A stretch of DNA of 64,000 nucleotides from Basidiobolus meristosporus CBS 931.73 (GCA_002104905.1 MCFE01000031.1:154346-218345), one strand, 5' to 3'. Counted from the first letter of the stretch, positions 1-64,000 are shown. Program-made: numbers and translations. The notes: generated from the letters alone by a model not told the origin.

Positions 1-94
1 ATGATTTAGGTAACATTGAATTCAAACCAATTTTATTTAGCATACATTCAAACTACGAGGAGAGCATGACTGCAGTCCACACAGTAGGTTCCAT

Positions 95-1702: not shown

Positions 1703-2008
1703 AACTGTAAGGCTACTTTGGGCCAAAGTGGCTTCTCACTGTATGGCCGCCTTCTAGGGGAATTTTTTTTCATTTTTTCGATTTTTTTAACACAACATAC
1801 ACTCCGATTACCTTGATCAATCGATTTGTGAAGTCGGATAGCGCTAATCAAGCGACTGATCCATCAATCTCGGCAGATATCTTGGGTTGCCACACAATGA
1901 GTAATAATGAGAAAGACAAGATTCGCTTCAAGTGACGAAGTGATTTATTGAAATCTGTACAAAATATACCATGTGAGGTGTAGAACCAAGGTGCCAATAA
2001 ATGCGCGC

Positions 2009-3355
2009 TTATTCACGTCCGGTGAGCTCTTTGGTTTCTTGAACAGTGGCTTCAAGATCTTCACTGACGTATTTATCGAAAAGATCCTGCTTTCTTCTTC
2101 GGACAAGAAAGCCCTCCACATCCTTCTGAGATGGAACATCCACGTGGGCAATAAACTTCACTTCGGAGTTATCCACATCGCCCTCAGCCACAGAAATGCT
2201 GGCTGGCTCTCGGGAGATGCTTCCTTCGCCTCCTTTCCTCTTCCTGCCCTTGGCGGTTCCTTGGTCATACTCCACCAGTATAAGGTCGTTGCTTTCTTCC
2301 AACCTAGCCCTCACTTGAAGGGAAAACCGGGTTCAGTACGGAGCCTGTTTCCGAAGGTAAACAAGGATACTTACGCTCTTTCTCTTGCTTTTCCTCGTAT
2401 TCCAATAAAATACCATCGTCTTCATCGCGATAGCCGTAATAGTCGGCATTGACATTCTTATACATCTCGTAGCGCGACTTGGATTCTACCTCTTGAGCGG
2501 CTGGATTCACCCGTAGCGAAGTTGGCCGTAAGTACGCTATTCACTGATTGGCCAGATAAATACGTTACCTTCCACTTCAAACAACTCCTTCACCCCAGGC
2601 AGCTCTCTCGCTCGACCAAAGTACCTAGAAAAGATGAAAAGTGAGGGGCAGTCCACCGGCAAGCCTTAATCTCGGAGATTTTACTTGTATCCACGGTTCC
2701 CAGGCACCGATTTGCCTTCATTGTCAATTATTCGCGGTGCTATTCTCTAATTACGCGAATTGAACGTGAGCTTATTCTGGTGTTGACGAACAGTCGACTC
2801 GACTGAACTATACCCTATAATCCGGACCGCCTAGATCTTTTATCTGTCTTTCCCAATGACCCTTCTCTCGAATGAGCTTGTTGATCTCGTCGTTCATATC
2901 TCTGACCTGATAATCCGAAAGTCCGGCTGTCAATGAAAGAGGTAAAAGTAAGTATACGGCATTATGGCGGCCTCACTCGATACACTCCAGCCAAACTAGT
3001 ACGATCCTACTAGATTTATACATACAGTTCTGGATCTGGGTCACTTTGCGAGAAATTTCGTTGATAATTTGACGTCTCCATTTCTCTGCTTCCGGTAAAC
3101 TACGGCACTCTGAGGCTAGATAAGGTCTGCGCTCATTCTTGTTGAATCCTAGTTCTGCGGCTCTGGCATCGCGGAACCGATGGAGCATAGATCTGGAAAA
3201 TAAATTACACGCTTTCTTAGTAAACAATGGTCGGAATGGGAGCCAAGGTGGGCGGGTATTACTGAGCCTTTTCTTCATTACGTGCCTAGATAGGGTTAGG
3301 TAGGTATGTTTAGAGACATGTTTGGGTGTAACGAGTAAAACGGAGAACATACCAT
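2009..3355 (-). CDS. ISY1: Pre-mRNA splicing factor Isy1 (multi-exon; ATG-only first exon)
   Basis: Spliced reading [84 protein letters not shown]; GT-AG introns. Confidence 0.93.
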
Positions 3356-3638
3356 CTCTACGATACAGGTTCGCTTGTACAAGCAACGGTGGAGGAAGTT
3401 GGATTAAAAGGGAGGTTTAATCAAAAACGGCAAGATATCCCGACTCGCAACAATCTAATCAACCTGCGAGCATTTCGTGACGACGGGCATCCCCTCCGAA
3501 ATTTTTGAATTTGAAATTTCCAAATCATGGGATTCCGAATTGGAAAAAAGATTTTGAATTTATTCGTCTAAGAAAAACTTTTGCTTAGTTGTGTTTGCCG
3601 AGACTCAAGCTTATCAGTACTTCGTCTTTATTTTGAAT

Positions 3639-4245
3639 ATGAGTTTCGTTAGCAGAGCATTCCAAGCGATAAATAGGGTTAAATGCGCCGGTTTCAGACC
3701 CAGAGGGATGGAGGAATTTTTCGAGGGTGGCATGGCCCTTCCCAAGGAGCAGCCCAAGACCGGTAAAGTCTTTCTCTCTCTTCCCAGACAACCAGACATC
3801 CTCCTAACCACCAGCGTTCAACATGTATAGGCCGCTCTTGGAGAGCCGGAGAGTTGCGTAACAAGAGTTTCGAAGACCTGCATAAGCTTTGGTATGTTGT
3901 GCTCAAGGAACGCAACATGTTGGCCAGTCAAAATGAAGAAGCCAAGCGTTGGGGAATCACCGAGCAATTCTTCACCAACAAGACCAGAGTCATTAAGGTT
4001 TGTTGAGTGGTTTATTTCCTTTGCAGGGTTTCCGTGTGAACTTCTGGCTCACCCGGTGCTTTCGCTTTCTCTAGTGCAAGAAGACCATGGCCAGAATCAA
4101 GTCGGTCCTCAACGAGCGTCGCATAGAATGGGAGAAGGCACAGAAAATCGTCAAGCAAAATGCCAAGGATGAAGCACCCACTGTTACTGAAACCACTGGC
4201 CGTAAGAGCTCCAAGAACAGAACTAAGGGCGCTAAGCATCAATAG
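3639..4245 (+). CDS. MRPL4: Mitochondrial ribosomal protein uL29m (MRPL47/Mrpl4 family), 2 introns
   Basis: Spliced [49 protein letters not shown]. Confidence 0.92.
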
Positions 4246-20493: not shown

Positions 20494-20983
20494 ATTGAGG
20501 AGGAAGCAAGAAAAGGCACTACTCGATCAAGCCAGGACGATTTTTTATTTCGAATAGATCCTCTACGAGGAAGCACCACAAGATAATCAAAATGGTTGGT
20601 CGCACTATATCTGTGATGTTGTCGTGTCTAGTCTACCCCACATCAACCGCCGCCATGATCTTATTTTTTTACCCAGCGGTGGTCAATTGGTGCCTTCAGC
20701 CTTTGAAAATCAATCCAGAAATGGAAATTAAATGGCAAAGTAATGGTTGATAACCGAAAGAATACCCACCGAGCCACAATTCAGTCAGAATTTCAAATCA
20801 TTCTCTGTGATTATCTGCCTCACAAAGGCCGAGCTGTTCCGAATAAGTAGTTTGATTCCTGTGGCTTGAGGGGGGATTTCGGATCTTGTGATGAAGCAAT
20901 ATAATCTAGGGAAAGATATTGGATTAAACCGCTTTGTGTTTAAACCGGGGTTTAAGTGTTTAGGATTAGGGTTAGGGGTTCTT

Positions 20984-47718: not shown

Positions 47719-50700
47719 TGTTGTAAAAATTCGGAATTCCACCTAAATATTCACCTAACTTAGTCACTTAGATCTTTACCTTCAAATCCCAGAGAAAACT
47801 GACCAAATTCCTTGTCAGGATTTACTTGGAATATTTACCCAGAACATGAAAATTCTCAAAGTTGTCCAAACAGCCCCAAACTTTGCACACATGTTCTTGG
47901 GACCTTCCTTAACCTATTCTATGTGTTTGTTATGCCAAGACCATGTAAAAGTATAAATACTACTTTTACATTCAATAAATTGCTAAGTGAAAACCACATA
48001 ATCTACTTGTTCTCCCAATCACTTCCAATATCTCCAAGACTCCTACTACAGATTATGAGCCCCGAGCTGGCACTATCTGCAATGACTACTACTGCTATTA
48101 CTGGAAGTTTCCCCTCTGCTGAAATTTTGGATGGATCTAACTACCAAGTGTGGAAGGTGAAGATGAAGATGCTGCTACAAGAAAGAGGCCTTTGGGATAT
48201 TGTCTTGGGAGAAGAATGCCCTCCTAAAAATGCGGGAGAGGAAGCCTTAAAGTACCAGAAGAAAGAACAAAGTGCCTTTAACTGCATTTGCCTTAATGTT
48301 AAGGACAAATTACTAATTCAATGCTCAAGAGCAAAAACAGCAAAGAATGCCTGGAAGGCATTAGAAGACACCTACCAGTCATGTTCAGCTACTAAGAGAA
48401 TGTATCTGAAACAAAAATTCTTTACTACAAAGATGCTGCCAGGAGAAGAAATGAAAATCTATTTAACAGAATTACCCCACTGGTAGATGAGATGGAATCT
48501 GTGGGCGTACCAACTACTGATGAGGATGTGATAGTTACCATCCTGAATAGCCTGACAGACAAGTTTCAGGGCCTTGTATCAGCCCTAGAGTCCAGAACTG
48601 AAGATTTGACCTTAACTTACATATATGGAGGCTCCTGGATGAAGAATTAAGAAAATCAAGCGCCAATAAGAAGGAAGAAGAAAATGCTTTAATAAGCAAT
48701 GATAACCAACAAAGGAGGTACCTAAGACCTTACAAAGGCAACAGCAACCTGTTTTGCAACTACTGAAAAAGGAAAGGACACACATTGGATTGGTGCCTCA
48801 AAAAGAGAGATAGTCAGCAGAAAAAGCCTGAGTATGGAAATGCTGCAACAACTGAAGATAGACTACTCATATCAGCACTAAATATGACCACAAACAAGAA
48901 TTCTCAGACATGGTGTATTGACTCTGGAGCATCTCAACATTTTACATACCAAAAAGAACTTTTTACCCAATATCAAGAAATCCCAATTAAGAAGGTATTC
49001 ATGGGTGACAATAGACCACTTAATGCAGTGGGAGAAGGACCTATCCAAGTAAACCTAAGAAGCAGTGAAGGAAGCCATACACTGACCTTTAAAGAAGTAC
49101 TTTATGTACCAGAAATAGCCAAGAACCTACTATCTGTAAGCAAGGCCACAGCAGAAGGACTCTGTTTGAGCTTTGACATTTCTGGATGTAAGATCACTGA
49201 TCAAAATGGTGTCCATATTGCTTCAGGTATCAGAGATCTGAATCTATACAAGCTGACTTATATTCCATCATGTCTGGAAGCCAGTATAAGTAACTTAAAT
49301 GAAGAAATACCAATGCTTTGGCACAGGAGATTTGGGCACATCAATTTTGATTATTTGTGCAAAATGATCAAAGATCAGCTAATTTCCAGAGTAAAAATTG
49401 ATCCCCCAGCTAGTTTGGAGCACTGTGAAGCCTGCATATATGGGAAACAAGCCAGACAGCTGTTCAAGAGCTCTTGATTAATCAAAACTAAGAAAAACTA
49501 GATCTAATTCACTCAGATCTGTGCAGGCCTATGCACAATTTATCCTTAGGTGGAATGAAGTATTTAATCACTTTTATTGATGATTATACAAGATACCTGT
49601 GGGTTTACTTCATGGAGAGAAAGGAAGAAGCTCTGTCTAAGTTCAGGGAGTTCAAAGCCATGGTGGAGAGAGAAACTGGTGAAAAAATCAAGAAAATATG
49701 CTCTGACAATGGTGGAGAATATACCTCAAAACTCTTTATCCACTTCTGCAAAATTCATGGGATAAAGCAAGAGACTACTGTGCCATACTCCCCACAGCAA
49801 AATCAAGTAGTAGAAAGTGATAACAGATCAATAATTAGCATGGCCAGATCTATGATCCATGATCAAGAATTATCCTATGAATTTTGGGTGGAACCAGTTG
49901 CCACAGCTTTACACCTTAAAAATAGGAGTTATAGCGTAATACTTTGTGATACTACTTTATTTGAAGCATGGTATGGATACAGACCAAGTGCAGAACATCT
50001 AAGAATATCTGGGTGTGCAGCATATGCCCTGAAATCAGTCAAAATTTGAGCCAAAAAATGTAAAATGCATATTTTTGGGCTACTGCAATGAGAGTAAAGC
50101 ATACAGACTCTACAATACCAAAGCAAAGAAGCTAATCAAGTCCTGGGATGTGTTGTTTGATCAAGATTCCAAATTTTCACAAAAAATGACATCAGATGAT
50201 GACAAGAATCTGATCCCAAGTCCACCAATTGTCAGGATTGAATCAGAGCAAAACAATGAAGATTTTTTCACTCCAGAGGACTCCACAACCATGGTTCTGC
50301 CAGAATCAGTGCCCAGGAATATCCCAGAAGTGATCATTCCAGTGTCAAATGCCTGGAGATCCAATCAGACAAGAAATAGCCCAAATTACAATATCAATGA
50401 GGGTACAAACTTAGCCTATGCTTATTCAGTCCATATTGATGAGCCTTAGACTGTAAAAGAGGCCCCAAATAGCCCTCAGAAATAGTTTTAGAGATCTGCA
50501 ATGACTGAGGAATATTAGGCCATGATGGAAAATCAAACCTGGGACTTAGTCAATTACCAATCAACCAAAAATCAGTTGGATGCAGATGGGTCTGCAAGAC
50601 AAATACAAGGCTGATGGTACAATTGAAAGTTACAAAGCAAGACTTGTGGCCAAGGGATACTCTCAAACAAAAGGACTTGACTATACCGAGACCTTTGCAC

Positions 50701-50805
50701 TGGTAGCCAAGTTTAATTCCATCAGATTGATATTGGCAATTGCAGCCAAATACAAGTTTTTTATACATCAAATGGAAGTAAAAGCTGCATTTTTAAATAG
50801 AGAAC
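47719..50805 (+). mobile_element. Ty1/copia LTR retrotransposon, degraded copy 1 (5' LTR 47719-48050, gag-pol with stops and frameshifts, truncated in RT)
   Basis: LTR starts TGTTGTAAAA; degenerate PBS GATTATGAGCCC; [34 protein letters not shown]. Ends at a CTAGGGGGG junction. Confidence 0.96.
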
Positions 50806-51746
50806 CTAGGGGGGAGACAGTCACCAACAGGTGATATCTTTATTTCAGTTGAAACATAGAAGTCAGCACTACTTTTATAGCTTTGATACTGTTGTAAGAG
50901 TCTTGGAGATATTGGAAGTGATTTGGAGAACAAGTAGATTATGTGGTCTTCACTTAATGATTTATTGAATGTAAAAATAATATTTATACTTTTACATGGT
51001 CTTGGCATTACACACATGTAGAATAGGTTAAGGAAGGTCCCAAGAACATGTGTGCAAAGTTTGGGGCTGCTTGGACCACTTTGAGAATTCTCATGTTTTG
51101 GGTACCTGGTATTTTGGTGAAAATATTCTAAGTAAATCCCGATAAGGAATTTGGTCAGTATTCTCTAGGATTTGAAGGTGATGATCTAAGTGACTAAGTT
51201 AGGTGAATATTTAGGTGGAAATACAAACTTTACAACAGATACAAGAGTGTGTGGCTGAGGGGAATATGTAGGTAAGTTAACAAGAAGTGATGATAGTTCT
51301 TCAGTGCTCAAGACACTGTTCAGTGGGAAGGGGGGTAGCAAGAGGGGTAAGAATGATTTGTGAGCAACATTAATGAGGGGAATAAGATAAGGATTGATAT
51401 TTATCATAAAGGGAGTGTGCTGCTTCAGATATTGCTGCCAAAGGTCTGTCAAGTACTTCAGGTAGGCCAGCTTGGGTTTTTCTGACTGCAGAATATAGCA
51501 AACTTCTTGACTTCAGGATTGCCAAGTATAGTTCTCCAGCAGGAGTCAGGTGTAGTGTGGTGTGTTCTCTTCCAGGCCTTGATTAGTGGGTTGTTGCAGT
51601 GGTGAAGTCTGAGATATAATCCAGTTCTAAGGTACAGAAGTCTGATCTTATAGGGCATAAACCCAAAAGCACCAAGAATAGCATGTCTGTAGGGGCATTC
51701 AGGCAGATGAGGCACCAGGGATGTAATGCACCAGACTGCAAACTTG
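50806..51746 (-). mobile_element. Telomere-type non-LTR unit, family B, copy 1 (3' part of RT ORF, degraded), interrupted by a solo LTR
   Basis: Aligns with 56131-56725; PHLPECPYRHAILGAFGFMPYKIRLLY; terminal TCACC-AACA-GGTGA hairpin. Confidence 0.88.
50890..51237 (-). mobile_element. Solo copia LTR (348 bp) with 5-bp target-site duplication GATAC
   Basis: Reverse complement of the LTR at 57291-57638; TGTTGTAA..TTACAACA termini; GATAC at 50885-50889 and 51238-51242. Confidence 0.96.
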
Positions 51747-54700
51747 TTAGGGTGTAGGTGTTATAGTAAGGGCTAGGAAAAGGTTAGAAGAGCAGGGGGT
51801 CTGGAAGAAACAGTCCCCTAGAGCATAAAAAAGCAAGGGGTTTGGGGGATGCAATCCCCCATACTGCTCCCATACTTTTTAAATTCCCTTTGGATTACTT
51901 TTCTCTCATTCTTAGTTCTGGTCCCTTAGGGTTAGAATTCCTCCTCATAACCCTTATCACCCTAACCATAAATATTTTTACCCTTGTTGTATCCAAGAGA
52001 AAGTGTAATAAAACTCTTGAATGATTTAACTGAACCAAAGGGACAATTAAGTGCAGAATCTTAGAATTGTCAGAGAGTGGCGGAAATATTAGCAGAAAGA
52101 TTCTGATCTAATATTGGTCTTGGATATAGCTGGGTTGGCTATAAAGGCAATGATATTTGTTTGCTAGGCAGGCTAGGCTTGGTGTTCTTTGGAGTGCTAG
52201 ATATACTAGGCTTGGATAGAAACTAGAACGGAATTGTTGGATTCTTATTTTTGCTGAGACAGAATCTTAATTTCGTTGAGACACACACTAAACCAAAAGG
52301 TTCAGTAAACTTTATTTATACTTTTCTGATCAAGTTGAATTAGTCAGCGCCAAGGGACTGGATTGATTGAAATCAATTTGGGTGTTCATAGGTGCATAAG
52401 ATAAATGAAAATTACATCATCAATCAACTGATGTCTTGGCAACTGCACAGTGGTTGGATAGATCTCAGATGACTAATCACCTGGGAAGGCTTGGCAGATA
52501 GGTTGATAACGTAATGACCATTTGGAAATAGATCAGGTGTGATAGCTAAAAATAGATTCTGAGGTGGGATAAAATAAACTGTAACTGGGATTTGTTATGT
52601 TTGGGTTAGGGAAAATCAGTTAGGGTACTAGATTTTCAAACGGAGTAAAATTGGCTAAGTTTTAAATGTTGATGCACAACAACCCTACAATTGGCACATT
52701 GTCTGCTCATATAGTGGGCAAGTCTAGGCCAATATTTATCTCCCTGTACTGTCCATATGCTCTGTATAAATCTTAATGACTGTTTAATTAATAAATTGTT
52801 ACTTTTAATGTATATCTAATAATTAATGGGAATCATCCCAAACTGGCCACAATCCCATATTTTGATAAGCTTTGGGCACCATAAATTGCACGGCCCTAAT
52901 ATGATAAAAAATTCATGGCCAATACAAATTTTCTGTAACCCAATTGCTTTTACCAAATATAAAGTGTATCCCAAAGTTCAATATATATTATGGCTATAAT
53001 AGAAACTTTATTTGACACCATTGCAACTACTACTTGTGTTCTATGTGCACATGTATCCTGCAGGAATCGTAAAACTTAGCCACATAGTACAAAAGTGTTT
53101 TTATTTTTCATCATGATAGTTTTACATGAGTTCCTAACGCACTTTGGAAGTACACAGTAGCCATACCCCAACAGGTTTTAAGGATGTCCACTAGCTACGT
53201 CTACTTGTGTCTAACAAGAGCCATCAATCATCAGCTGTGTGATACTGAAATGCTTTTATTTTTCATCATACTAGTTTTGTATGAATCCCTAACGCACTTT
53301 CATAGTGCACGGTAACCATACCCCAACAGGTTTTAAGGATACCCACTTGCTATGTTTACTTGTGTCTAGCAGGAGTCATCAATCATCAGCTGTGCGGTAA
53401 TAAAGTGCTTTTATTTTTCATCACAATAGTTTTACATGAGTCCCTAACGCACTTTCATAGTGTGCGGTAACCATACCCCCAGAAAGTAGTGTGGATGCTT
53501 ACTTTAAACGCTCACTTGTGTATTGTAGGGACTATCAACAAACAGCCGTGTGGGAATGGAACATCATAGAAAAGTATTGCTTTGTTGTTAGCAAGTATTG
53601 ATGCGCAAATATTGGTACAATGTGAATTATTGAGTAACTATTTACTTTAGTTGGTTCCATGATATTCCTAGACAATATGCTCAAAATCAATATTAGCATC
53701 AATAGCTTGCTCTTTGATCACTAAACCACCGCACCCAATATGTGGTGGTCTTGGTTTTGTCTAGCCATCAAGGAATGAAACCAGAGTACAGTCACAAGAG
53801 AGGCAAAAGTGAAATGTGATGAAGTAAGTGTATATGAAAGTAATATAAATCTACAGGACAGAAGAGAACAACTAGTAGTTGAACAGCACTCACTGACACT
53901 CCACCAAGTAGAGCACCAACACGGACAATAAATAAGCCATGAGGGGAAAGCTTAAGGACCGCTACTTGGGGATCAAGACCAAAAGAGGAAGCTGCCTCTA
54001 CCATAGCAGTCCTTGTGCTCCAAAGGAAGACCAAGAGTCTACTATAGACAAAGATTGTGGCAAGAAGAGCAGTACAATTACCAGTCTGGTAGTGGTACCT
54101 TTGGAAGTCCCAAATACCTGGAGAAAACTTGGAAAAAATTGGCAGATGACTCAGTTGCCCTGAGGAGAAAACAAACCAATGCAATTGAGCAGTTCCAAAA
54201 TGAACTTCAGCTTAGTTCTTCTTTGCCTCACTATAAAGTACTCCAAGTGGCTTATTTGGATTATAAGCGTATGAAGGAGAATCAGGCAGAGACTGATAAA
54301 TTAAGTGATAGTCAATTGCATCACTTCTTAGATCAGGTAGAGAAACAGTTGCACAGCCAAGAGACGGAACAAGAATTGACAATTACAGAAACTAAATAAT
54401 TTTGCCAATGTAGTTTTGCATATTAATAAAATAAAAGGGTGTTAATAAGAACAGAATAAAGTTAACTATGTGTACATCAAATGATTCAAATACTGGCTAG
54501 ATGGATGTTACATAGGAGCAAGAAGCTCAGTAACCTCAAAGGAAAGATATGATAAATGGGCCACCAACATCATCCAAATGAGTATAAAAGTGGAGAAAGT
54601 AGACATAATCCTTCATAAAAAACAAGAAGCATGGAAGCAGGCAGTAGCCAGGTAGATGCCAGGAGTGAAGGTAGAGTACAAAGAGAGCAAGGAAGGGGAC

Positions 54701-55068
54701 AAGGATGTGGAAGAGGACGCAGAACTGGGCGCAAAAGAGGAAGAGGGCAAGGAAGTGGCCAAATCCAAGAGGAGTGTGAAGGAGGTGTTGCAGCAAATGT
54801 GAATGATGCTGAGCAAGTTGCTGTTGTCACTACCAGGCAGCCGGTTAACCAAGTTTCCCAAGCATTATCAAAGGTTTGACAAGAGCTTCTGGAATATAGG
54901 ACAACATTGCACCATGAGATATTGCAACATATGTGCCAGGAGATTAAGCAGAGGAGGGGTGATATTGTAAAGCTAAATCAGGATATTGCTGGACTTCAAG
55001 CCCAGATTGATTTCAGTTTCCACCATTCTACTGAGGCATTAGTGGCACAAATGGTGGAAAAGTTTGCC
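51747..55068. other. Unassigned 3.3-kb segment D, bounded by TTAGGG junctions; decayed ORFs, GC hairpins and a tandem repeat
   Basis: Its first 39 bp or so recur at 56094-56134; hairpins GGGGGATGCAATCCCCC near 51845; no recognisable protein family. Confidence 0.5.
53092..53480. repeat. Tandem repeat, 155-bp period, about 2.5 copies
   Basis: TG(T/C)TTTTATTTTTCATC recurs at 53096, 53251 and 53406 with matching intervening sequence. Confidence 0.9.
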
Positions 55069-55107
55069 TTAGGGTTAGGGGGGAGACAGTCACCAACAGG
55101 TGAGATC
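55069..55107 (-). mobile_element. 39-bp stub of a family B 3' end (telomeric repeats plus first hairpin only)
   Basis: TTAGGGTTAGGGGGGAGACAGTCACCAACAGGTGAGATC followed immediately by another TTAGGGTTAGGG. Confidence 0.85.
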
Positions 55108-55363
55108 TTAGGGTTAGGGGGGAGGGAAAGTCACCAAGTTGGTGAAATCTTTATTTGAGTTAAGAACTAATCTAAGTACAAATAGAGAAGCCAATTTAGA
55201 GGTCTAGAATCTCTCTAATAAGTAATCTAATTTATGTTTTGTTTCATCTCTAATGTTTGTTTCAATAGAGTAAAGCTCATCAGGGGTAAATATAAAATTC
55301 AGGAGTTTTGGGGGAAGTACAAATTGTAGATGTTTCTGATCAATATAATCCAAGACTGGAACC
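55108..55363 (-). mobile_element. 256-bp 3' stub of a family A unit
   Basis: Near-identical to 60742-60990; truncated at GGAACC|TTAGGG. Confidence 0.9.
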
Positions 55364-56090
55364 TTAGGGTTAGGGGGGGGATGATAATCACCACAGGGTG
55401 AAATCTTTATTTAAATCATAAATAAAGAAGCCAAATTTGAATAAGAATAGTTGAGATGCAGAAAGCCTACAAGATAAACTTGGACTTTGCTGTATCCCAA
55501 ATATCCTCAATATTGAAGTCTAGAGGAGAATGTAGCAAAACTGCTTGTTCACTGTAGTATTTCTTGAGGAAGTTTGTGACTTGAAGGTAAGGAGAGTTTT
55601 TCAACAAGCTGGTAAACCTTTTGAGGAGTTCTTTCTCCAGAGAGAATGGTACAAAGAGTGGAATGTCCAAATGATGTCTGAATATATGCTCTGAGAGCTC
55701 CCAATCCAGCATATTTTTGACTTCTTCTGTAAAATCTTCAACAATATCTTTGTCAAGAATAACTTCCAAGAGATCCCTGGCAATGTACTGAATGTTAATA
55801 ATCTTAGGCATATGAATACCTAGGACCTTGAGGTAATTTTGTTGTTCTGAAATTGGGAGATAGCCAGCATTTCTGAAATAGCAAACAGCCCAATTGGCAG
55901 TGGGAGGAGTATCAGGGCTGACAGGGAATCTTCTTCTAGCTTTAGGGTGCACTGGCTTAGGTGACTGTCTTGTTGAAAGGGCAGCTGGCTTTGGATGAGC
56001 TTGAAGTGCTTGGGAGTATGTCAGAGTATGAATGGCAGGAGTTGCTGGTTGCTGACAGTGGTCAGATTGACTGGAAGAAGAGCTGGTTGA
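55364..56090 (-). mobile_element. Family C1 unit: 5'-truncated ORF1/Gag-like-only element (ORF open 56087 to 55467)
   Basis: TYSQAL..WAVCYFRNAGYLPISEQ..LEVILDK..LLHSPL; homologous to 62952-63654; ends in the shared double hairpin and CCCTAA. Confidence 0.82.
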
Positions 56091-56130
56091 GGGTTAGGGT
56101 GTAGGTGTTATAGTAAGGGCTAGGAAAAGG
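56091..56130 (-). mobile_element. About 40-bp stub of the segment D terminus
   Basis: TTAGGGTGTAGGTGTTATAGTAAGGGCTAGGAAAAGGTTAG is identical to 51747-51787. Confidence 0.8.
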
Positions 56131-57290
56131 TTAGGGGGGAGACAGTCACCAACAGGTGAAATCTTTATTTCAGTTGAAACAAAGAAGCCAGTACTACTGT
56201 TGTAGCTTTGATACAAGAGTGTGTAGCTGAGGGGAATTAGTAGGTAAGTTAATAAGAAGTGATGATAGTTCTTCAGTGCTCAAGACACTGTTCAGTGGGA
56301 AGGGGGGTAGCAAGAGAGGTAAGAATGACTTGTGAACAACATTAATGAGGGGAATGTGATAAGGGTTGACATTCATCATAAAGGGAGTGTGCTGCTGCAG
56401 ATATTGCTGCCAAAGGTCTGTCAAGTACTTCAGGTGGGCCAGCTTGGGTTTTTCGGACTGCAGAATAAATTCAGCAAACTTCTTGACTTCAGGATCTCCA
56501 AGTATAGTTCTCCAGCAGGAGCCAGGTGTAGTGTGGTGTGTTCTCTTCCAGGCCTTAATCAGTGGGTTGTTGCAGTTGTGAAGTCTGAGGTATAATCTGG
56601 TTCCAAGGTAGAGAAGTCTGATCTTATAGGGCATAAACCCAAAAGCACCAAGAATAGCATGTCTGTAGGGGCATTCAGGCAAATGAGGCACCAAGGAGGT
56701 AATGCACCATACTGCAAACTTGTCAAGCTTAGTGCAGTCTCTAGAAGTAAGAGAGAGAAGTGGTAAGCCAAATTCCAGGACAGGGAAGACAAACGGCTTG
56801 AGTAGAAGAAGGCAGCTGGGAGCTGAAGTTGTAGGAGGAGTAACAGCCAGTAGCTTGTGGAGTGCCTGTCTTGCCAGGATAATTCTCTTCTTCAGGTGTG
56901 CTCCAGAGTCTAGTCCAGTAGAAAGGAAAGGAAAGCCAAGATATGTAGAAGAAACCTGAGCAGGTAGAGTGGAGTTCTCCAAGTTGATGGGAGAGCCCAA
57001 AGGAACTGTCTTTGCAATGGAAAGCTGGAGATTATTCTTCTGCAGATACTGGTGGATGGTCTGGGAGTCTTGTTGCACATTGGAGGAGGATATTCTGATG
57101 TCATCAGCAAAGAGAGTAACCAGGCAGTCAGCTGAGAGTCTTGGGAAATCATTCAGGAAGATGGCAAACAGTATAGGACCAAGCACAGAGCCTTAAACCA
57201 CTCCATTAGGAACTGAGAACACAGCTGATTGCTCACTTGGGTGCAGAATTCTTGCTTGTGGATCCAGAAACAGAGACCTGACAAGGAGGG
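56131..57290 (-). mobile_element. Telomere-type non-LTR unit, family B, copy 2 (RT palm to C-terminus; nonsense codon in the QG motif)
   Basis: NGVV*GSVLGPILF..TLFADD..YLG..VLEFGL; 5' side cut by copia insertion at 57291. Confidence 0.92.
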
Positions 57291-60200
57291 TGTTGTAAAA
57301 ATTTGTAATTCCACCTAAATATTCACCTAACTTAGTCACTTAGATCATTTCCCTCAAATTCTAGAGAATACTGACCAAATTCCTTGTCGGGATTTACTTA
57401 GAATATTTTCACCAAAATACCAGGTACCCAGAACATGAAAATTCTCAAAGTTGTCCAAACAGCCCCAAACTTGCACACATGTTCTTGGGACCTTCCTTAA
57501 CCTATTCTACGTGTTTGTTATGCCAAGACCATGTAAAAGTATAAATACTACTTTTACATTCAATAAATCATTAAGTGAAAACCACATAATCTACTTGTTC
57601 TCCCAATCACTTCCAATATCTCCAAGACTCTTACAACAGGTTATGAGCCCCGAGCTGTCACTCTCTGCAATGTCTACTACTGCTATTACTGGAATTTTTC
57701 CCTCTGCTGGAAAGTTGGATGGATCCAACTACCAAGTGTGGAAGGTGAAGATGAAGATGCTGTTGCAAGAAAGAGGCCTTTGGGATATTGTCATGGGAGA
57801 AGAATGCCCTCCTAAAAACGTGGGAGAGGAAGCCTTAAAGTACCAGAAGAAAGAACAAAGTGCCTTTAACTGCATTTGCCTTAATGTCAAGGACAAATTG
57901 CTAATTCAATGCTCAAGAGCAAAAACGGCAAAGAATGCCTGGAAAGCATTAGAAGACACCTACCAGTCATGTTCAGCTGCCAAGAAAATGTATCTGAGAA
58001 GAAAATTCTTTACTACAAAGATGCTGCCAGGAGAAGAAATGAAAAATCTAATTATCAGAATTACCCTGCTGGTAGATGAGATGGAATCGGTGGGCGTACC
58101 AACTACTGATGAGGATGTGATAGTTACCATCCTGAATAGCCTGACAGACAAGTTTCAGGGCCTTGTATCAGCCCTAGAGTCCAGAACTGAAGATTTGACC
58201 TTAAATTATGTATATGGAAGGCTCCTGGATGAAGAATTAAGCAAATCAAGCGCCAATAAGAAGGAAGAAGAAAATGCTTTAATAAGCAATGATAACCAAC
58301 AAAGGAGGTACCCAAGACCCTACAAAGGCAACAGCAACCTATTTTGCAACTACTGCAAAAGGAAAGGACACACATCAGACCGGTGTTTCAAAAAGAGAGA
58401 TTATCAGCAAAAGAAGCCTGAATATGGAAATGCTGCAACAACTGAAGATAGACTATTCATATCTGCACTAAATATGACCACAAACAAGGATTCTCAGACG
58501 TGGTATATTGACTCTGGAGCTTCTCAACACTTTACACACCAAAAAGAACTTTTTACCCAATATCAAGAAATTCCAATTAAGAAGGTTTTCATGGGTGACA
58601 ATAGAACACTTGATGCAGTGGGAGAAGGAACTATCCAAGTAAACCTTAGAAGCAGTGAAGGAAGCCATACACTGACCTTTAAAGAAGTACTCTATGTACC
58701 AGAAATAGCCAAGAACCTACTCTCTGTAAGCAAGGCCACAGCAGAAGGACTCAGTTTCAGTTTTGACAATTCTGGATGCAGGATCACTGATCAAAATGGT
58801 GCCCATATTGCTTCGAGCATCAGAGATCAGAATCTATACAAGTTGACTTATATTCCATCATATCTGGAAGCCAATATAAGTAACTTAAATGAAGAAACAC
58901 CAATGCTTTGGCACAGGAGATTTGGACACATCAATTTTGATTATTTGCGTAAAATGATCAAAGATCAGCTAATTTCTGGAGTGAAAATTGATCCCCCAGC
59001 TAATTTGGAGCACTGTGAAGCCTGCATATATGGGAAACAAGCCAGACAACCGTTCAAGAGCTCTGGGTTAATCAAAACTAAGAAAAAATTAGATCTAATT
59101 CACTCAGATCTGTGTGGACCTATACAAAATTTATCCTTAGGCGGGATGAAGTATTTAATCACTTTTATTGATGATTATACAAGATACACATGGGTCTACT
59201 TCATGGAGAGAAAGGAAGAAGCTCTGTCTAAGCTCAGGGAGTTTAAAGCCATGGTGGAGAGAGAAACTGGTGAAAAAATCAAGAAAATACGCTCTGACAA
59301 TGGAGGAGAATATACCTCAAAACTTTTCATTCACTTCTGCAAAATTCATGGGATAAAGCAAGAGACTACTGTACCATACTCCCCACAGCAAAATGGAGTA
59401 GCAGAACAAGCTAACAGATCAATAATTGATATGGCAAGATCTATGATCCATGATCAAAAATTATCCTATGATTTTTGGGCGGAATCAGTTGCCACTGCTG
59501 TATATCTTAAAAATAGGAGTTATAACAGAATACTTCGTGATTCTACTCCATTTGAAGCATGGTATGGATACAGACCAAGTGCAGAACATCTAAGAATATT
59601 TGGGTGTACAGCATATGCCAAAAAACTGGCCGGAAATCAGTCAAAATTTGAGCCAAAAAGTGTAAAATGCATATTTTTGGGCTACTGCAATGAGAGTAAG
59701 GCATACAGACTCTACAATACCGAAGCAAAGAAGCTGATCAAGTCCAGGGATGTGTTGTTTGATGAAAATTCAAAATTTTCACAAAAAATGACATCAGATG
59801 ATGACAAAAATTTGATCTCAAGTCCACCAATTGTCAGGATTGAATCAGAGCAAAACAATGAAAATTTTTTCACTCCAGAGGACTCTACAACCGTGGTTCA
59901 GCCAGAATCAGTGCCCAGGAATATCCCAGAAGTGATCATTCCAGTATCAAATGCCCGGAGATCAAATCGGACAAGAAATAGCCCAAATTACTATATTAAT
60001 GAGGGTACAAACTTAGCCTATGCCTATTCAGTCCATATTGATGAACCCCAGACTGTAAAAGAGGCCCTAAATAGCCCTCAGACGAAGTTTTGGAGATCTG
60101 CAATGACTGAGGAATATCAGGCCCTGATGGAAAATCAAACTTGGGACTTAGTCAAATTACCAATCAACCGAAAATCAATTGGATGCAGATGGGTCTTCAA

Positions 60201-60741
60201 GACAAAGTACAAGGCTGATGGTACAATTGAAAGATACAAAGCAAGACTTGTAGCCAAAGGATACTCTCAAACAAAAGGACTTGACTATACTGAGACCTTT
60301 GCACCGGTAGCCAAGTTTAATTCCATCAGATTAATATTGGCTATTGCAGCCAAATATAAGTTTTTTATTCATCAAATGGATGTAAAAACTGCATTTTTGA
60401 ATGGAGAACTTGCTGAGGACGTGTATATGGACCAGCCTGATGGGTTTGTTGACCAAGATAACCCCCATTTGGTCTGCAAGCTTAAAAAGTCACTATATGG
60501 TCTCAAACAATCACCAAGAGCCTGGAATTGCAAGATAGATTCTTATTTGGAATCTTTGAGTTTCAAAAGGAGTAATGCTGACTATAGTATATACTATAAG
60601 CCAGATAGAGCCAATCCAGTTCTATTAGCTCTATATGTGGATGATCTTATTATAGCCACCAATAACCTAGAAACATTGGAAGAAACTAAATCCAGCCTAT
60701 CTAAGGAGTTCAAGATGTCCAATCTAGGAGAACTTAGTTAC
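57291..60741 (+). mobile_element. Ty1/copia LTR retrotransposon copy 2 (5' LTR 57291-57638, PBS 57639-57650, open gag-pol truncated after RT YVDD; no RNase H or 3' LTR)
   Basis: CNYCKRKGHTSDRC knuckle, WYIDSGASQH protease, HSDLCGP/DDYTR/SDNGGEY/NGVAEQ integrase before RT (copia domain order), LYVDDLII. Confidence 0.98.
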
Positions 60742-62813
60742 TTAGGGGAGGGAAAGTCACCAAGTTGGTGAAATCTTTATTTGAGTTAAGAACTAATCTA
60801 GGTACAAATAAAGAAGCCAATTAAGAGGTCTAGAACCTCTCTAATAAATAATCTAATTTATGTTTTGTTTCATCTCTAATGTTTGTTTCAATAAAGTAAA
60901 GCTCATCAGGGGTAAATATAAAATTCAGGGGTTTTGGGGGAAGTACAAATTGTAGATGTTTCTGATCAATATAATCCAAGACTGGAACCCAGCCTGGGAT
61001 TAGGTGTAGTAGGAAAGGTGTGTGGACTTGTAAGTAGCTCTGCCACATAGATCTTAGATGGTCCTGAGCCAGTAGTCTTGGTTTCTCAGCTTTTTGAAGT
61101 TTTGAAGCAAGCTCTGTTACTACAGCAGAGCCAACCAGGGTGTGCCAGCAAGAAGATTTCAGGGAGGAGTTAGATTGAAGCCATTGTTTGATGGAGGGGT
61201 TATGTGATTTCTGAAGTTTGACTAGGAAGGAAGCACGGAGATAGACCATTTGGATTTGGTATGGGTAGAAGCCAAAGGCTCCATTAGTTGCATGGATATA
61301 GGGAGATACTGGAAGATAAGGTACCAAGGATCTGATACACTGATGGAGAAATTTATCCAGGCGGTGAAGTTCTCTGGAGGTTAGGGGTATAATGTGGAGA
61401 CCAAACTCAAGTACCGGCAGTACATACTGCTTCAGAAGTATAGGGATCTTTTGAAATGGAGTGTCTGGAGTGACTACTACCAGAAGCTTTTTGAGAGCCT
61501 GTTGAGCAAGACGGATCCTATTATTCAGGTGGAGCTTTGAGTCAATCCCATGTTGACAAAATGGCAGACCTAGATATATTGCAGTTTGTTGTGGCAGAAT
61601 GGTAGTGTTCTGTATAGTTGTAGTGCATCCAATTGGGACTGTCTTGGAAATTGAGAGTGAGAGGTTGTTGGCAGCCAAGTACTTCTCAATGATGGCAGTG
61701 TCTGCTATGGGATTAGGAGTAGCAATCTTGATATCATCCGCATAGAGAGTTAGTAGTGGATAGGGAGAGTCTGGTGAGGGGCCTTTTGGAAATAAAGGAA
61801 AGTCATGTAGGAATATCACAAATAGTAAGGGACCTAGTACAGATCCTTGGACTACTCCATTTGGAACCTCATAAGTCTCTGATGTACAACTTGGATGCAA
61901 AATTTTGGCTGAGTTCTCACAAAATAGAGAACGTACAAGAAGGGTCATTGGTAGTGTGGTAACTGCTAATAGCTTTCTCCAAAGCAGAGCTCTGTCCACA
62001 GAGTCAAAGGCTTTAGTAATGTCAAACAGAATGGTTGGCAATGAGAATTGAAGTGAATGATCATGGCTTAGCACTACAGCCATATCCAAGGAGAGTTTGG
62101 GCAAGAAGCCAAACTGAGAAGGATGGAATGGATATAGTTGAGATTGCAAGGATCTTGCAATTATAAGCTCAAAGATTTTCCGGCAGGTTGGCAGGAGTGA
62201 AACTGGCCGGTAAGAACCTGGGAGTGAGTGTTTCCCCTTCCCTTTGTATAAGGGTATTACATTTGCCTGTGACCAGGCCTTTGGGGTAGTCAATTGTTGG
62301 GCACAGATAGAGTAGAATGGGAGAAGTAAGTGACTCATTTTGGAGTAGCACACCCGGAGTAGATCGCAGGTAATCAAGTCATGTCCAGGTGCAGTATTTG
62401 CAGGAAGCTTCTTTAAAATTTTCTCCAGAAGCTTTGCTGAAGCCAAAATTGGAGATGTTGGACTGCTAGATATGTTACCAGTATGGTAGAAAGGAGGAGT
62501 GGGATGCACGGTTGAATCAAAGAATATAGGGGCCAGTTTGTCTGGTGATGGTATACTCCTTGCTTGGGGTCTCATGGCTTTATATACTCTTGATATGGAC
62601 CTTGTGGTGGCATTCATATTTACTAAGGGCAAGGTATCCATGATATGAGCCCATAATCTAGTATGCTCAGTGATCTGTAGTGACTTGGAGTAGGAGATTG
62701 CGCTTTCCAGGAGGTTCTGTGTTTTTGGGTTAGGGAAACATAGGTAGCTGGAATTTAAGGCAGAAATGATGGATTTCCATTTAAGTTGGTTTGCAGATGG
62801 CTTTTGGTAGGAC
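60742..62813 (-). mobile_element. Telomere-type non-LTR unit, family A: 5'-truncated but uninterrupted RT ORF (about 660 aa, stop at 60830)
   Basis: APGHD, YRPVSLL, QFGF, FDITKAFDSVDR, GVVQGSVLGPLLF, LYADD, YLG; no zinc knuckle or nuclease motif C-terminal to RT. Confidence 0.95.
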
Positions 62814-63654
62814 TTAGGGGTTAGGGGAGGGAAAGTCACCAAGGTAGGTGAAATCTTTATTTGATTTCAGACAAGTCTAACTACAAATAAAGAAGCCAGT
62901 TGGGAATAGAAGATTCCCAAAGTATAAACACTAAGTTGAATATGAATAAATCTAAGCTAAAGTTAAGGCAGTATCCCAGAGTACACTGGAGTTCAGGTTC
63001 ATGGGGGAGTGAAGTAGATAAGCTTGAGAGATATAATAATCTTTGAGGAAGTGGGTAACAGCAGGTGAAGGGGAGTTTTTGATAAGTAAAGTGAATCTTG
63101 AGAGCAGAGATTCCTCTAAGGAGAAGGTCTTGTAAACCGGAGAATCAGGAAACTCTTTAAAGGCATGGTCAGTAGGTTCCCAGTAAAGCTGGTCAGAGAC
63201 ATTTTGAGAGAACTCTTTAGCAATACTTTTGTCAAGTACTACCTCCAGAGTATGATGGTTGATAAATCTCATGTTAACAATCTTGGATAAGTTGTAACCT
63301 TGTTGCTTGAGATACATCCTATGCTCAGATATAGGAATAAACTCCACATTGGCAAAGTAGCAGACAGCCCAGTCAGTAGCAGGAGGCAAATTGGAAGTGG
63401 CAGGAAACTTTCTTTTAGTCTTGGGAGGAGCAGCAGGATGTCTTGAGGAAGCAGGAACAGGCTTTTTGACAGCTTCAGAGTAGGAAGAGTGAGCAGGAGC
63501 AAATGATTCTTGGGGAGTCTTGTTGACAGGAAGAGCTGGCACAGGGACAATAGATTCTTGCAGATCAGAAAAGGCAGAAAACAGCTTTTGAACTTGTTTC
63601 TTGAGTAAAGCATTTTCAGCTTCAACAAGTGCAAGCCTTTCCTCAAGGAAGGAG
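62814..63654 (-). mobile_element. Family C2 unit a: 5'-truncated ORF1/Gag-like-only element (ORF stop at 62952)
   Basis: Coiled coil (EERLALVEAENALLKKQVQKL), SYSEAV, Pro-rich linker, WAVCYF domain; shared 3' structure. Confidence 0.85.
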
Positions 63655-64000
63655 GTTAGGGGAGGGAAAGTCACCAAAGTAGGTGAAATCTTTATTTGAT
63701 TTCAGACAAGTATAACTACAAATAAAGAAGCCAGCTGGGAATAGAAGATTCCCAAAGTAAACACTAAGTTGAATATGAATAAATCTAAGCTAAAGTTAAG
63801 GCAGTATCCCAGAGTACACTGGAGTTCAGGTTCATAGGGGAGTGAAGTAGATAAGCTTGAGAGATATAATAATCTTTGAGGAAGTGGGTAACAGCAGGTG
63901 AAGGGGAGTTTTTGATAAGTGAAGTGAATCTTGAGAGCAGAGATTCCTCTAATGAGAAGGTCTTGTAAACTGGAGAATCAGGAAACTCTTTGAAGGCATG
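63655..64000 (-). mobile_element. Family C2 unit b: tandem near-identical copy, runs off the window
   Basis: Repeats 62819-63170 at an offset of about 835 bp; ORF stop at 63785. Confidence 0.9.

What the first reader, a model, noticed from the sequence alone, without database searches (positions are those of the whole stretch)
50806..64000. HeT-A/TART-like chain of telomere-primed retroelement units: candidate undescribed chromosome-end maintenance system
Seen: ten junctions (50806, 51747, 55069, 55108, 55364, 56094, 56131, 60742, 62814, 63656), each starting with TTAGGG or a close variant on the + strand (CTAGGG at 50806). The units are head-to-tail, and the eight A/B/C units are all sense on the minus strand, 3' end to the left and 5'-truncated at variable points. 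No poly(A) tail or target-site duplication is visible. At least four sequence families (A, B, C1, C2) share the same terminus. Known: Drosophila HeT-A/TART, Athena/Coprina Penelope-like elements and Magnaporthe MoTeRs form polarised terminal arrays. Inference: RNAs ending in CCCUAA anneal to the G-rich 3' chromosome end and are reverse-transcribed onto it, so the telomere lies to the right. The RT is LINE-like rather than Penelope-like and has no C-terminal REL domain, which fits none of those systems exactly.
Basis: partly seen in the sequence, partly recalled or inferred. Interest (0 to 1): 0.93.

Follow-up and report, generated by a model that had tools for sequence, protein, structure and literature searches.

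The report
Telomere-capping retrotransposon arrays in a fungus
The right end of this contig is a one-way chain of truncated LINE-type retrotransposons and their non-autonomous partners, each joined to the next through one or two TTAGGG repeats, and the same chains lie just inside the telomere caps of every other sampled chromosome end in this (probably Basidiobolus) fungus, a fungal counterpart of the fly HeT-A/TART telomere.

Summary
All ten junctions exist. Eight share a conserved 3' module: two stem-loops, a C-run, then TAA(CCCTAA). All eight are sense on the minus strand.

Genome-wide the terminus motif occurs 1406 times forward and 119 reverse. Listed copies lie within about 22 kb of the contig end they point to. 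In 9 of 12 sampled contig ends the last truncated unit is capped directly by about 200 bp of (TTAGGG)n. The window itself stops at its contig's end, inside a unit.

There are two autonomous LINE families (ORF1 plus APE-endonuclease/RT ORF2, many intact), two ORF1-only families and a ~530-bp SINE-like family. All carry the same 3' module.

Junction tracts are only 6-27 nt and show microhomology to the broken parent sequence. Proximal units are older than distal ones. Two copia elements are cut off exactly at junctions. This fits repeated reverse transcription onto eroded chromosome ends.

No description was found in the literature searched. This scan flagged the same thing on at least eight other pieces of this genome. 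Verdict: a new variant of a known kind (telomeric retrotransposon arrays).

The parts
47721..50805 (+). Copia-type LTR retrotransposon (5' LTR, gag, protease, integrase, part of RT). It is cut off inside RT exactly where the array begins and forms the proximal boundary of the array.
   Evidence: 92.3% identical to positions 1-3117 of the copia at 57293-60741; ORFs.
50806..51747 (-). Unit of autonomous LINE family A: the 3' ~0.6 kb (end of ORF2 plus 3' module), 5'-truncated. It is the oldest unit in the array (about 92-94% identical to an intact copy). Junction reads CTAGGGGGG.
   Evidence: BLAST to A reference positions 3386-3977; terminus found.
50889..51235 (-). Solo copia LTR nested inside the first A unit, in inverted orientation.
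   Evidence: 94.3% identical to positions 1-347 of the copia, reversed.
51748..55068 (+). 'B': a ~0.94-kb LTR-like repeat (TGTAGG...CCTACA) plus an internal region with plus-strand ORFs, truncated at 55068. Not a member of the telomeric LINE group. Its left end abuts TTAGGG.
   Evidence: The LTR part is dispersed in both orientations, often as pairs 5.2 kb apart. Ends read. In other loci the internal part carries an SNF2-like ORF.
55069..55107 (-). 39-nt stub of family A: telomeric tract plus the second stem-loop only.
55108..55363 (-). 256-nt stub of autonomous family C1 (3' UTR).
   Evidence: 96.5% identical to C1 reference positions 3978-4229.
55364..56093 (-). Unit of ORF1-only family D (161-208 codon Gag-like ORF), 5'-truncated.
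   Evidence: 92.9% identical to D reference positions 232-949. The ORF is homologous to the C-terminal half of A ORF1 (E=1e-16).
56094..56128 (+). 35-nt stub of the B LTR left end. It is preceded by GGGTTAGGG and is cut at its own internal GGTTAG, where the next A unit starts.
   Evidence: (7 nt shared with the parent sequence)
56129..57292 (-). Family A unit, 1.16 kb (C-terminal 330 codons of ORF2 including part of RT, plus the 3' module). Interrupted at 57292 by the copia insertion.
   Evidence: 97.8% identical to A reference positions 2817-3980; partial RVT_1 hit.
57293..60741 (+). Copia-type LTR retrotransposon inserted into the A unit, later cut off inside RT at a site where the parent sequence reads ...GTTAC TAC TTAGGG ATT.
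   Evidence: 1106-codon ORF. Parent continuation seen (loose end at 60742).
60742..62813 (-). Family C1 unit, 2.07 kb: 670-codon 5'-truncated ORF2 (RT with YADD motif, C-terminal region) plus the 3' module. Young copy (99.4% identical to an intact copy).
62814..63655 (-). Unit of ORF1-only family C2, 842 nt, with a 241-codon Gag-like ORF (coiled coil, RRM-like domain, helical C-terminal domain).
63656..64000 (-). Second C2 unit, cut by the end of the contig.
   Evidence: 97.1% identical to the previous unit; contig ends at window position 64000.

Best explanation
Window 50806-64000 is the inner part of a chromosome-end array. It was built by repeated reverse transcription of a small consortium of non-LTR retroelements onto the receding 3' end of the G-rich strand.

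The consortium has five families:
- Two autonomous LINEs, A and C1. ORF1 has a zinc-finger-like motif, a coiled coil, an RRM-like domain and a C-terminal domain. ORF2 is an APE-fold endonuclease plus RT.
- Two ORF1-only families, C2 and D, which are HeT-A-like.
- A ~530-bp non-coding SINE-like family, E.

All five carry the same 3' module: a 10-bp A/U-rich stem, a 5-bp UCACC/GGUGA stem, a short spacer, and C4-10 UAA(CCCUAA).

Proposed cycle. Steps 2-4 are inferred.
1. A telomere cap of about 200 bp TTAGGG is lost, or the end breaks, exposing arbitrary sequence.
2. The exposed 3' end, sometimes after a few telomerase-added bases, pairs over a few bases with the CCCUAA stretch at the 3' end of an element RNA that ORF2p holds by the stem-loop module.
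3. RT extends the chromosome end. It often aborts or switches to another RNA, giving 5'-truncated units and 33-50 nt stubs.
4. Telomerase re-caps the new end.

So the elements act as an end-healing and end-extension layer beneath a conventional TTAGGG cap.
For: Shown:
- The window ends at the contig end.
- The terminus motif occurs 1406 times forward and 119 reverse. (TTAGGG)4 occurs 7604 times forward and 81 reverse, the same bias, so the polarity relative to the telomere is fixed.
- On 10 contigs of 169-345 kb, all 34 listed termini lie within 22.2 kb of the end they point to.
- 82/82 termini and 64/64 BLAST matches in 13 arrays have the same orientation.
- In 9 of 12 sampled ends the last unit, truncated at varying points, is capped directly by about 200 bp of (TTAGGG)n.
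- Junction tracts are only 6-27 nt. The counts of 0/1/2/3/4 repeat units are 5/52/21/3/1. Insertion at random places in 200-bp caps would not give this.
- The sequences left of junctions are non-telomeric: unit bodies, copia, an SNF2 gene fragment. Of 27 independent junctions, 21 share at least 1 nt and 14 share at least 2 nt with the telomeric register, against about 44% and 16% expected.
- Two copia elements and B are cut off exactly at junctions, and their missing parts do not follow.
- There is an age gradient. Family A divergence rises with distance from the end: Spearman 0.75, p=8e-6, n=27.
- Dozens of intact 922- and 949-codon ORF2s exist, with the YADD motif intact.
- The 3' module is shared by all five families and by a relative with 50% ORF2 identity from another sample, which also ends in CCCCCTAACCCTAACC.
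- Short-read unitigs from the same sample show many further joints between a truncation point and a terminus.
Against: - Full-length copies keep an APE-fold endonuclease with the catalytic positions conserved, apart from a family-wide E-to-D change. A nicking step therefore cannot be excluded.
- No RNA data were available. Transcript 3' ends and the pairing step are unobserved.
- TERT could not be searched for.
- Only 13 arrays were read in full. Some identical junctions on different contigs (for example L022 and L024) show that recombination or duplication also spreads array segments.
- The contig carrying the window has no assembled cap.
Confidence: 0.68

Rival explanations
1. Endonuclease-dependent, telomere-repeat-specific insertion of the TRAS/SART or MoTeR type. 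The APE domain nicks the G-strand of duplex TTAGGG repeats. Ordinary target-primed reverse transcription then inserts the element inside the telomere tract, and the terminal CCCUAA only helps register.
For: The APE fold is kept and its catalytic positions are invariant across families that are only 36-55% identical. Structural matches include R1Bm EN (Z 20.4) and TRAS1 EN (Z 19.8). Orientation relative to the repeat is fixed.
Against: - Left flanks of junctions are non-telomeric, with only 0-7 nt of shared register.
- Tracts between units are at most 27 nt in 82/82 junctions, although caps are about 200 bp.
- Truncated copia and B elements lack their distal halves.
- The age gradient points to addition at the tip.
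Confidence: 0.2
2. The arrays are mostly relics spread by recombination between chromosome ends (break-induced replication, unequal exchange, subtelomere duplication). Retrotransposition is rare, and the junction pattern is largely inherited.
For: Identical terminal junctions occur on different contigs (L022 and L024). Runs such as E-E-E recur. The assembly holds very many similar ends.
Against: - More than 27 different breakpoints were seen in only 13 arrays, and many more in unitigs.
- Dozens of intact ORF2 copies are about 98-99% identical to each other.
- The order and content of units differ in every array read.
Confidence: 0.1
3. Assembly artefact: chimeric joins of repeats at contig ends.
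For: The contig ends inside a repeat. The assembly shows an odd orientation bias.
Against: The same junction grammar appears in dozens of contigs and independently in short-read unitigs. Junctions are precise to the base and have conserved structure.
Confidence: 0.02

Closest known systems
Drosophila HeT-A / TART / TAHRE (Jockey-clade telomeric LINEs)
   Same: Polar head-to-tail terminal arrays with the 3' end towards the centromere and variable 5' truncation. A consortium of pol-encoding elements and a Gag-only partner. The endonuclease domain is retained in the pol element although the additions are terminal (PMC5537684).
   Different: Here a TTAGGG cap is present, whereas flies have no telomerase repeats. 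The 3' end is CCCTAA, not oligo(A). ORF1 gave no zf-CCHC hit in Pfam. A SINE-like partner exists. The RT clade was not determined. The host is a fungus.
Bombyx/Tribolium TRAS and SART (R1-clade, APE endonuclease, telomere-repeat specific)
   Same: APE-type LINEs confined to telomeres that keep telomerase-type repeats. The predicted EN fold matches TRAS1 EN (Z 19.8).
   Different: TRAS and SART insert at a fixed nucleotide inside long repeat tracts and carry poly(A) (PMC5537684). Here the flanks are non-telomeric, the tracts are at most 27 nt, and there is no poly(A).
Athena / Coprina endonuclease-deficient Penelope-like elements
   Same: Short reverse-complement telomeric repeats at the 3' end, thought to pair with the G-rich overhang. 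Restricted to chromosome termini (PMC8557442).
   Different: Those have a PLE/TERT-like RT, no endonuclease and hammerhead ribozymes. Here the elements have a LINE RT (best solved relative is L1 ORF2p), an APE domain and ORF1. No Rfam hit, hammerhead included, was found in window 50000-64000.
Fungal MoTeR / FoTeR / Cnl1 (CRE-clade)
   Same: Fungal, telomere-associated, in a fixed orientation in or next to TTAGGG repeats (PMC12857005, PMC1635262).
   Different: Those have a single ORF with a C-terminal REL endonuclease. Here there are two ORFs, an N-terminal APE domain and no REL domain.
Giardia GilM/GilT, Chlorella Zepp, and endonuclease-independent L1 insertion at dysfunctional mammalian telomeres
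   Same: LINE-like elements that accumulate at, or are added to, chromosome ends (PMC10088271, PMC5537684).
   Different: From my own recall of those systems, not checked against the papers read here: none is described with a shared stem-loop/CCCTAA 3' module used by autonomous, ORF1-only and SINE-like partners together.

Membership tests
APE-type non-LTR (LINE) retrotransposon | Reverse transcriptase domain with the YxDD catalytic motif | tested here: met
   RVT_1 at E=8e-21. YADD aligned to L1 ORF2p.
APE-type non-LTR (LINE) retrotransposon | N-terminal apurinic/apyrimidinic-type endonuclease | tested here: met
   Absent from the truncated window copies and present in full-length genomic copies. 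AF2 model pLDDT 80.6. Foldseek to APE1/ExoA at E about 1e-11. VIA Z about 20 to R1Bm and TRAS1 EN. Catalytic N, D/N, H, D and SDH are kept; the metal-binding E is replaced by D in all copies. Pfam score is borderline, 21-27.5 bits.
APE-type non-LTR (LINE) retrotransposon | Target-site duplications and a poly(A) or simple-repeat tail | tested here: not met
   No TSD and no poly(A). The tail is C-run + TAA(CCCTAA). This is expected if additions are terminal.
Drosophila HTT-type telomeric arrays | Exclusive polar head-to-tail arrays at chromosome ends | tested here: met
Drosophila HTT-type telomeric arrays | Arrays replace telomerase repeats | tested here: not met
Drosophila HTT-type telomeric arrays | Jockey-clade RT | not tested
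TRAS/SART-type telomere-repeat-specific LINE | Insertion at a fixed position inside telomeric repeat tracts, with telomeric DNA on both flanks | tested here: not met
   Upstream flanks are non-telomeric and tracts are 6-27 nt.
Athena/Coprina EN-deficient PLE | PLE-type RT, no endonuclease, hammerhead ribozyme | tested here: not met
   LINE RT. APE domain present. No Rfam hit in window 50000-64000.
Athena/Coprina EN-deficient PLE | Reverse-complement telomeric repeats at the element's 3' end | tested here: met
MoTeR/FoTeR/Cnl1 (CRE clade) | Single ORF with a C-terminal REL endonuclease | tested here: not met
   Two ORFs. The C-terminal region of ORF2 has no Pfam domain, and the endonuclease is N-terminal and APE-type.
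tRNA-derived SINE (for family E) | tRNA-like head with A and B boxes, plus a LINE-derived tail | tested here: inconclusive
   A shared LINE 3' module and a recurrent defined 5' end (9 times) were seen. The A-box-like and GGTTCAAATCC motifs were seen by eye only. ARAGORN and Rfam find no tRNA.

The most novel reading that the evidence does not exclude
The consortium is a host-integrated, HTT-like end-maintenance system that runs alongside telomerase. Every critically short or broken end in a fungus with several hundred chromosome ends is healed by element addition. The abundant ORF1-only families supply the telomere-targeting Gag, as HeT-A does, and the conserved E-to-D endonuclease has been repurposed, for example to process the end rather than choose the site. 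That would be an independent fungal origin of retrotransposon-assisted telomeres in a culturable organism.
Probability: 0.2. Interest if true: 0.85.

Novelty: new variant of a known kind. Interest (0 to 1): 0.64.

Why it matters
Telomeric retrotransposon arrays are the main argument that telomerase and retroelements are interchangeable solutions to the end-replication problem. Well-studied cases are few: flies, silkworm, rotifers, Giardia and Magnaporthe/Fusarium.

This one combines features that are otherwise seen separately:
- an APE-type LINE with ORF1 and ORF2;
- a Gag-only partner, as in flies;
- a CCCTAA 3' end, as in endonuclease-free Penelope-like elements;
- a SINE-like passenger;
- conventional TTAGGG caps.

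It occurs at what looks like hundreds of ends in an early-diverging fungus that can be grown in culture. That would allow direct tests of whether end-priming needs the endonuclease, and of whether such elements buffer telomere loss.

Tried and rejected
Positional statistics therefore rest on 20 contigs of known length and 13 arrays read in full.
- tRNA origin of family E: ARAGORN and Rfam were negative.
- Hammerhead or other known RNAs in the array: none found.
- The Gag-like protein gave no Pfam family and no significant Foldseek match. VIA gives only weak RRM-type matches, Z 4-6.3, so 'L1-type ORF1p' remains a resemblance.
- The EN profile found only 9 proteins among 1.8 billion. The domain is very diverged, but all distant hits are LINE endonucleases.
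- No RNA runs were found, so expression and transcript ends are untested.
- The poly(A) signal reading of AATAAA was set aside. It forms one arm of the first conserved stem and no A-tails are present.
- Plain TTAGGG enrichment in the window is not significant. Only the composite terminus is.
- RT clade assignment was not attempted for lack of labelled references.


Full report
**Where the window lies**

The window is G000:C602:154346-218345. The contig has 218,345 bases, so window position 64000 is the right end of the contig.

The assembly has 89.5 Mb in 1366 contigs. The only named close relative of the element RT is a protein of Basidiobolus meristosporus CBS 931.73. The host is therefore probably a Basidiobolus, an early-diverging fungus. 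This is inference, not proof.

**The observation**

All ten junctions are present.

Eight of them share a composite terminus on the plus strand:
- 0.5-2.5 TTAGGG-like units;
- a G-run;
- a 5-8 nt family-specific spacer;
- [A/G]TCACCA-loop-GGTGAAATCTTTATTT.

Plain TTAGGG is not enriched in the window: 37 found against 29.8 expected. The composite terminus occurs 1525 times in the genome, against 0 for the reversed control.

BLAST with full-length reference copies shows that every unit is sense on the minus strand and 5'-truncated at a different point. No copy exists in the proximal 50.8 kb of the window.

Unit map:

| Coordinates | Unit |
|---|---|
| 50806-51747 | A, with an inverted solo copia LTR nested at 50889-51235 |
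| 51748-55068 | B |
| 55069-55107 | A stub |
| 55108-55363 | C1 stub |
| 55364-56093 | D |
| 56094-56128 | B stub |
| 56129-57292 | A |
| 57293-60741 | copia |
| 60742-62813 | C1 |
| 62814-63655 | C2 |
| 63656-64000 | C2, cut by the contig end |

**Genome context**

The terminus motif occurs 1406 times forward and 119 reverse. (TTAGGG)4 occurs 7604 times forward and 81 reverse. The two share the same bias, so the elements have one polarity relative to the telomere repeat.

On the ten contigs of 169-345 kb whose lengths I obtained, all 34 listed termini lie within 22.2 kb of the end they point to. Forward copies are near right ends, and the two reverse copies on C80 are near its left end.

I read 12 further contig ends in full:
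- 82 of 82 termini and 64 of 64 BLAST matches have the same orientation.
- Nine of the 12 ends finish in about 200 bp of near-perfect (TTAGGG)n joined directly to the last, variably truncated unit.

The window's own contig simply stops before its cap.

**The elements**

Full-length copies elsewhere in the genome show two autonomous families.

Family A is about 4.6-4.7 kb:
- ORF1 is about 500 codons, with a CPNC...C-x-C zinc-finger-like motif, a coiled coil and a conserved C-terminal half.
- ORF2 is 922 codons.

Family C1 has an ORF1 of at least 428 codons and an ORF2 of 949 codons. A single stop codon separates the two ORFs.

Dozens of ORF2 copies are intact. The RT has YADD, and its best solved relative is L1 ORF2p.

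The first ~215 residues of ORF2 are a very diverged endonuclease domain:
- Pfam scores are borderline.
- A profile of the domain finds only nine proteins among 1.8 billion, and the distant ones are all LINE Exo_endo_phos domains.
- A structure model (pLDDT 80.6, pTM 0.80) matches APE1/ExoIII-type nucleases: Foldseek E about 1e-11, and VIA Z 20.4 to R1Bm EN and 19.8 to TRAS1 EN over about 200 residues.
- Aligned with canonical LINE endonucleases, the catalytic N, D-x-N, H, D and S-D-H positions are kept. The metal-binding Glu of the 'QET' motif is Asp in every copy.

Families C2 and D are 0.85-0.95 kb and encode only a 240-285 codon protein. That protein is 25-28% identical to the C-terminal half of A and C1 ORF1 (E=7e-13 and 1e-16). 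C2 and D are 49% identical to each other. The protein's model shows an N-terminal coiled coil, a beta-alpha-beta-beta-alpha-beta domain with weak RRM matches, and a helical tail.

Family E is about 528 bp and non-coding, with the same 5' end in nine copies. By eye it has A-box-like and B-box-like motifs, but ARAGORN and Rfam see no tRNA.

All five families share a 3' module:
- a 10-bp stem, UCUUUAUUU...AAAUAAAGA, with a family-specific tip;
- two U residues;
- a 5-bp UCACC/GGUGA stem;
- a spacer;
- C4-10 UAA, with or without one more CCCUAA.

The module is also present in a relative with 50% ORF2 identity from another sequencing sample. That relative ends AATAAAGATTACACCTGCTGGTGG...CCCCCTAACCCTAACC.

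**How units were added**

Junction telomeric tracts are 6-27 nt. The counts of 0, 1, 2, 3 and 4 repeat units are 5, 52, 21, 3 and 1. The caps are about 200 bp. Insertion at random positions in caps of that length would leave a tract of 27 nt or less only about one time in seven. All 82 junctions doing so is not credible (inference).

The DNA to the left of junctions is ordinary sequence: element bodies, copia, B, and an SNF2 gene fragment. Where the unbroken parent sequence is known, 21 of 27 junctions share at least 1 nt with the telomeric register and 14 of 27 share at least 2 nt. A blunt-join null gives roughly 44% and 16%.

At 60742 the parent copia reads ...GTTAC TAC TTAGGG ATT. The new unit therefore started at, or within 3 nt of, an internal TTAGGG.

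Both copia elements and B lack their distal parts. This is what erosion or breakage followed by healing would leave, and not what an internal insertion would leave.

Within family A, divergence from an intact copy rises with distance from the contig end: Spearman 0.75, p=8e-6, n=27. Median divergence is 1.45% within 3 kb of the end and 2.2% beyond. In the window, unit identity to intact copies generally rises outward, from about 92-94% at the proximal A unit to 99.4% at the distal C1 unit.

Very short units of 33-50 nt that stop just past the second stem suggest abortive synthesis or template switching.

Short-read unitigs from the same sample contain many further joints between a truncation point and a terminus. 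An assembly artefact is therefore unlikely.

**Mechanism**

The best reading is terminal target-primed reverse transcription. An uncapped 3' end pairs over a few bases with the CCCUAA stretch of an RNA that ORF2p holds through the shared stem-loop module, and the end is extended. Telomerase then re-caps it.

Shown: location, polarity, junction anatomy, age gradient and coding capacity.

Inferred: the pairing step, recognition of the 3' module, and the role of telomerase.

The conserved endonuclease means an endonuclease-assisted step cannot be ruled out. The same puzzle exists for TART (PMC5537684).

**Family B**

B starts with TGTAGG and ends with CCTACA about 0.94 kb later. This LTR-like part is dispersed in both orientations, often as pairs 5.2 kb apart. 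In other loci its internal part carries plus-strand ORFs, including an SNF2-like helicase fragment. It is not a minus-strand retro-unit.

In all five array copies that I could read, its left end is preceded by (TT)AGGG and lies in the same orientation. Two or three further copies are stubs of 8-46 nt (L027).

I cannot explain this. Possibilities are integration into junction repeats, capture of its DNA at ends, or copying of read-through array transcripts.

**Comparison and novelty**

- The arrays behave like HeT-A/TART/TAHRE, but telomerase repeats are present, there is no oligo(A), and ORF1 gave no zf-CCHC hit in Pfam.
- The elements share an APE endonuclease with TRAS/SART, but fail the defining feature of insertion inside long repeat tracts.
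- They share the reverse-complement telomeric 3' end with Athena/Coprina (PMC8557442), but are LINEs with an endonuclease and no hammerhead.
- The known fungal telomeric elements MoTeR, FoTeR and Cnl1 are single-ORF REL-endonuclease elements (PMC12857005).

Full-text searches found no paper on Basidiobolus or Zoopagomycota telomeric retroelements. First readers of this scan flagged the same kind of array on at least eight other pieces of this genome. Those are unchecked notes and did not change my reading.

I file this as a new variant of a known kind.

Noticed in passing
whole assembly: Nearly all telomere tracts (7604 forward, 81 reverse) and element termini (1406 forward, 119 reverse) are oriented so that the telomere sits at the right end of its contig. 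97 of 100 ORF2 hits are on the minus strand. Contig orientation should be arbitrary, so this is probably a property of the assembler or of curation. It also means almost no contig carries a cap at its left end.
   Followed up: no
whole assembly: 7685 matches to (TTAGGG)4, at about 30 overlapping matches per 200-bp cap, imply roughly 250 capped contig ends in 89 Mb. This points to a very large number of small chromosomes or a highly fragmented polyploid assembly.
   Followed up: no
window 51748-55068 and 56094-56128; L014:2503 and 7003; L015:5370: The LTR-like element B always has (TT)AGGG at its left end inside arrays. It lies in one orientation and is often reduced to stubs of 8-46 nt. In other loci its interior carries an SNF2-type helicase ORF, reminiscent of subtelomeric helicase elements such as yeast Y'.
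   Followed up: partly
L012:7433-7720 (5' UTR of family A, minus strand): The 5' UTR of full-length A has a ~108-bp tandem duplication and an internal CCCTAACCCTAA just upstream of ORF1. A complete cDNA therefore carries a built-in TTAGGGTTAGGG seed about 280 nt from its distal end.
   Followed up: no
L004:1703-3289 and other arrays: Family E (~528 bp, non-coding) has a fixed 5' end and A/B-box-like motifs (including GGTTCAAATCC). It looks like a telomere-restricted SINE that uses the LINE 3' module. tRNA finders do not confirm a tRNA origin.
   Followed up: partly
L035 (Logan ERR14127551), L033 (ERR14042384), L034 (ENA ERZ27274739): Relatives with 48-67% ORF2 identity occur in other public samples. 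L035 keeps the two-stem module and the CCCCCTAACCCTAACC end, so the system is older than this strain or species.
   Followed up: partly
ORF2 residues ~30-35 of all copies (alignment A2): The metal-binding Glu of the LINE endonuclease 'QET' motif is Asp (L-I-D-V) in every member of this group, while the other catalytic residues are kept.
   Followed up: partly
window 20966-20977: An isolated interstitial TTAGGGTTAGGGG lies about 30 kb inside the array boundary, with no element sequence beside it.
   Followed up: no
L014:5730-7004, L016:2-1207: SNF2-family helicase gene fragments lie inside arrays on two other contigs. One is cut off at a TTAGGG junction.
   Followed up: no
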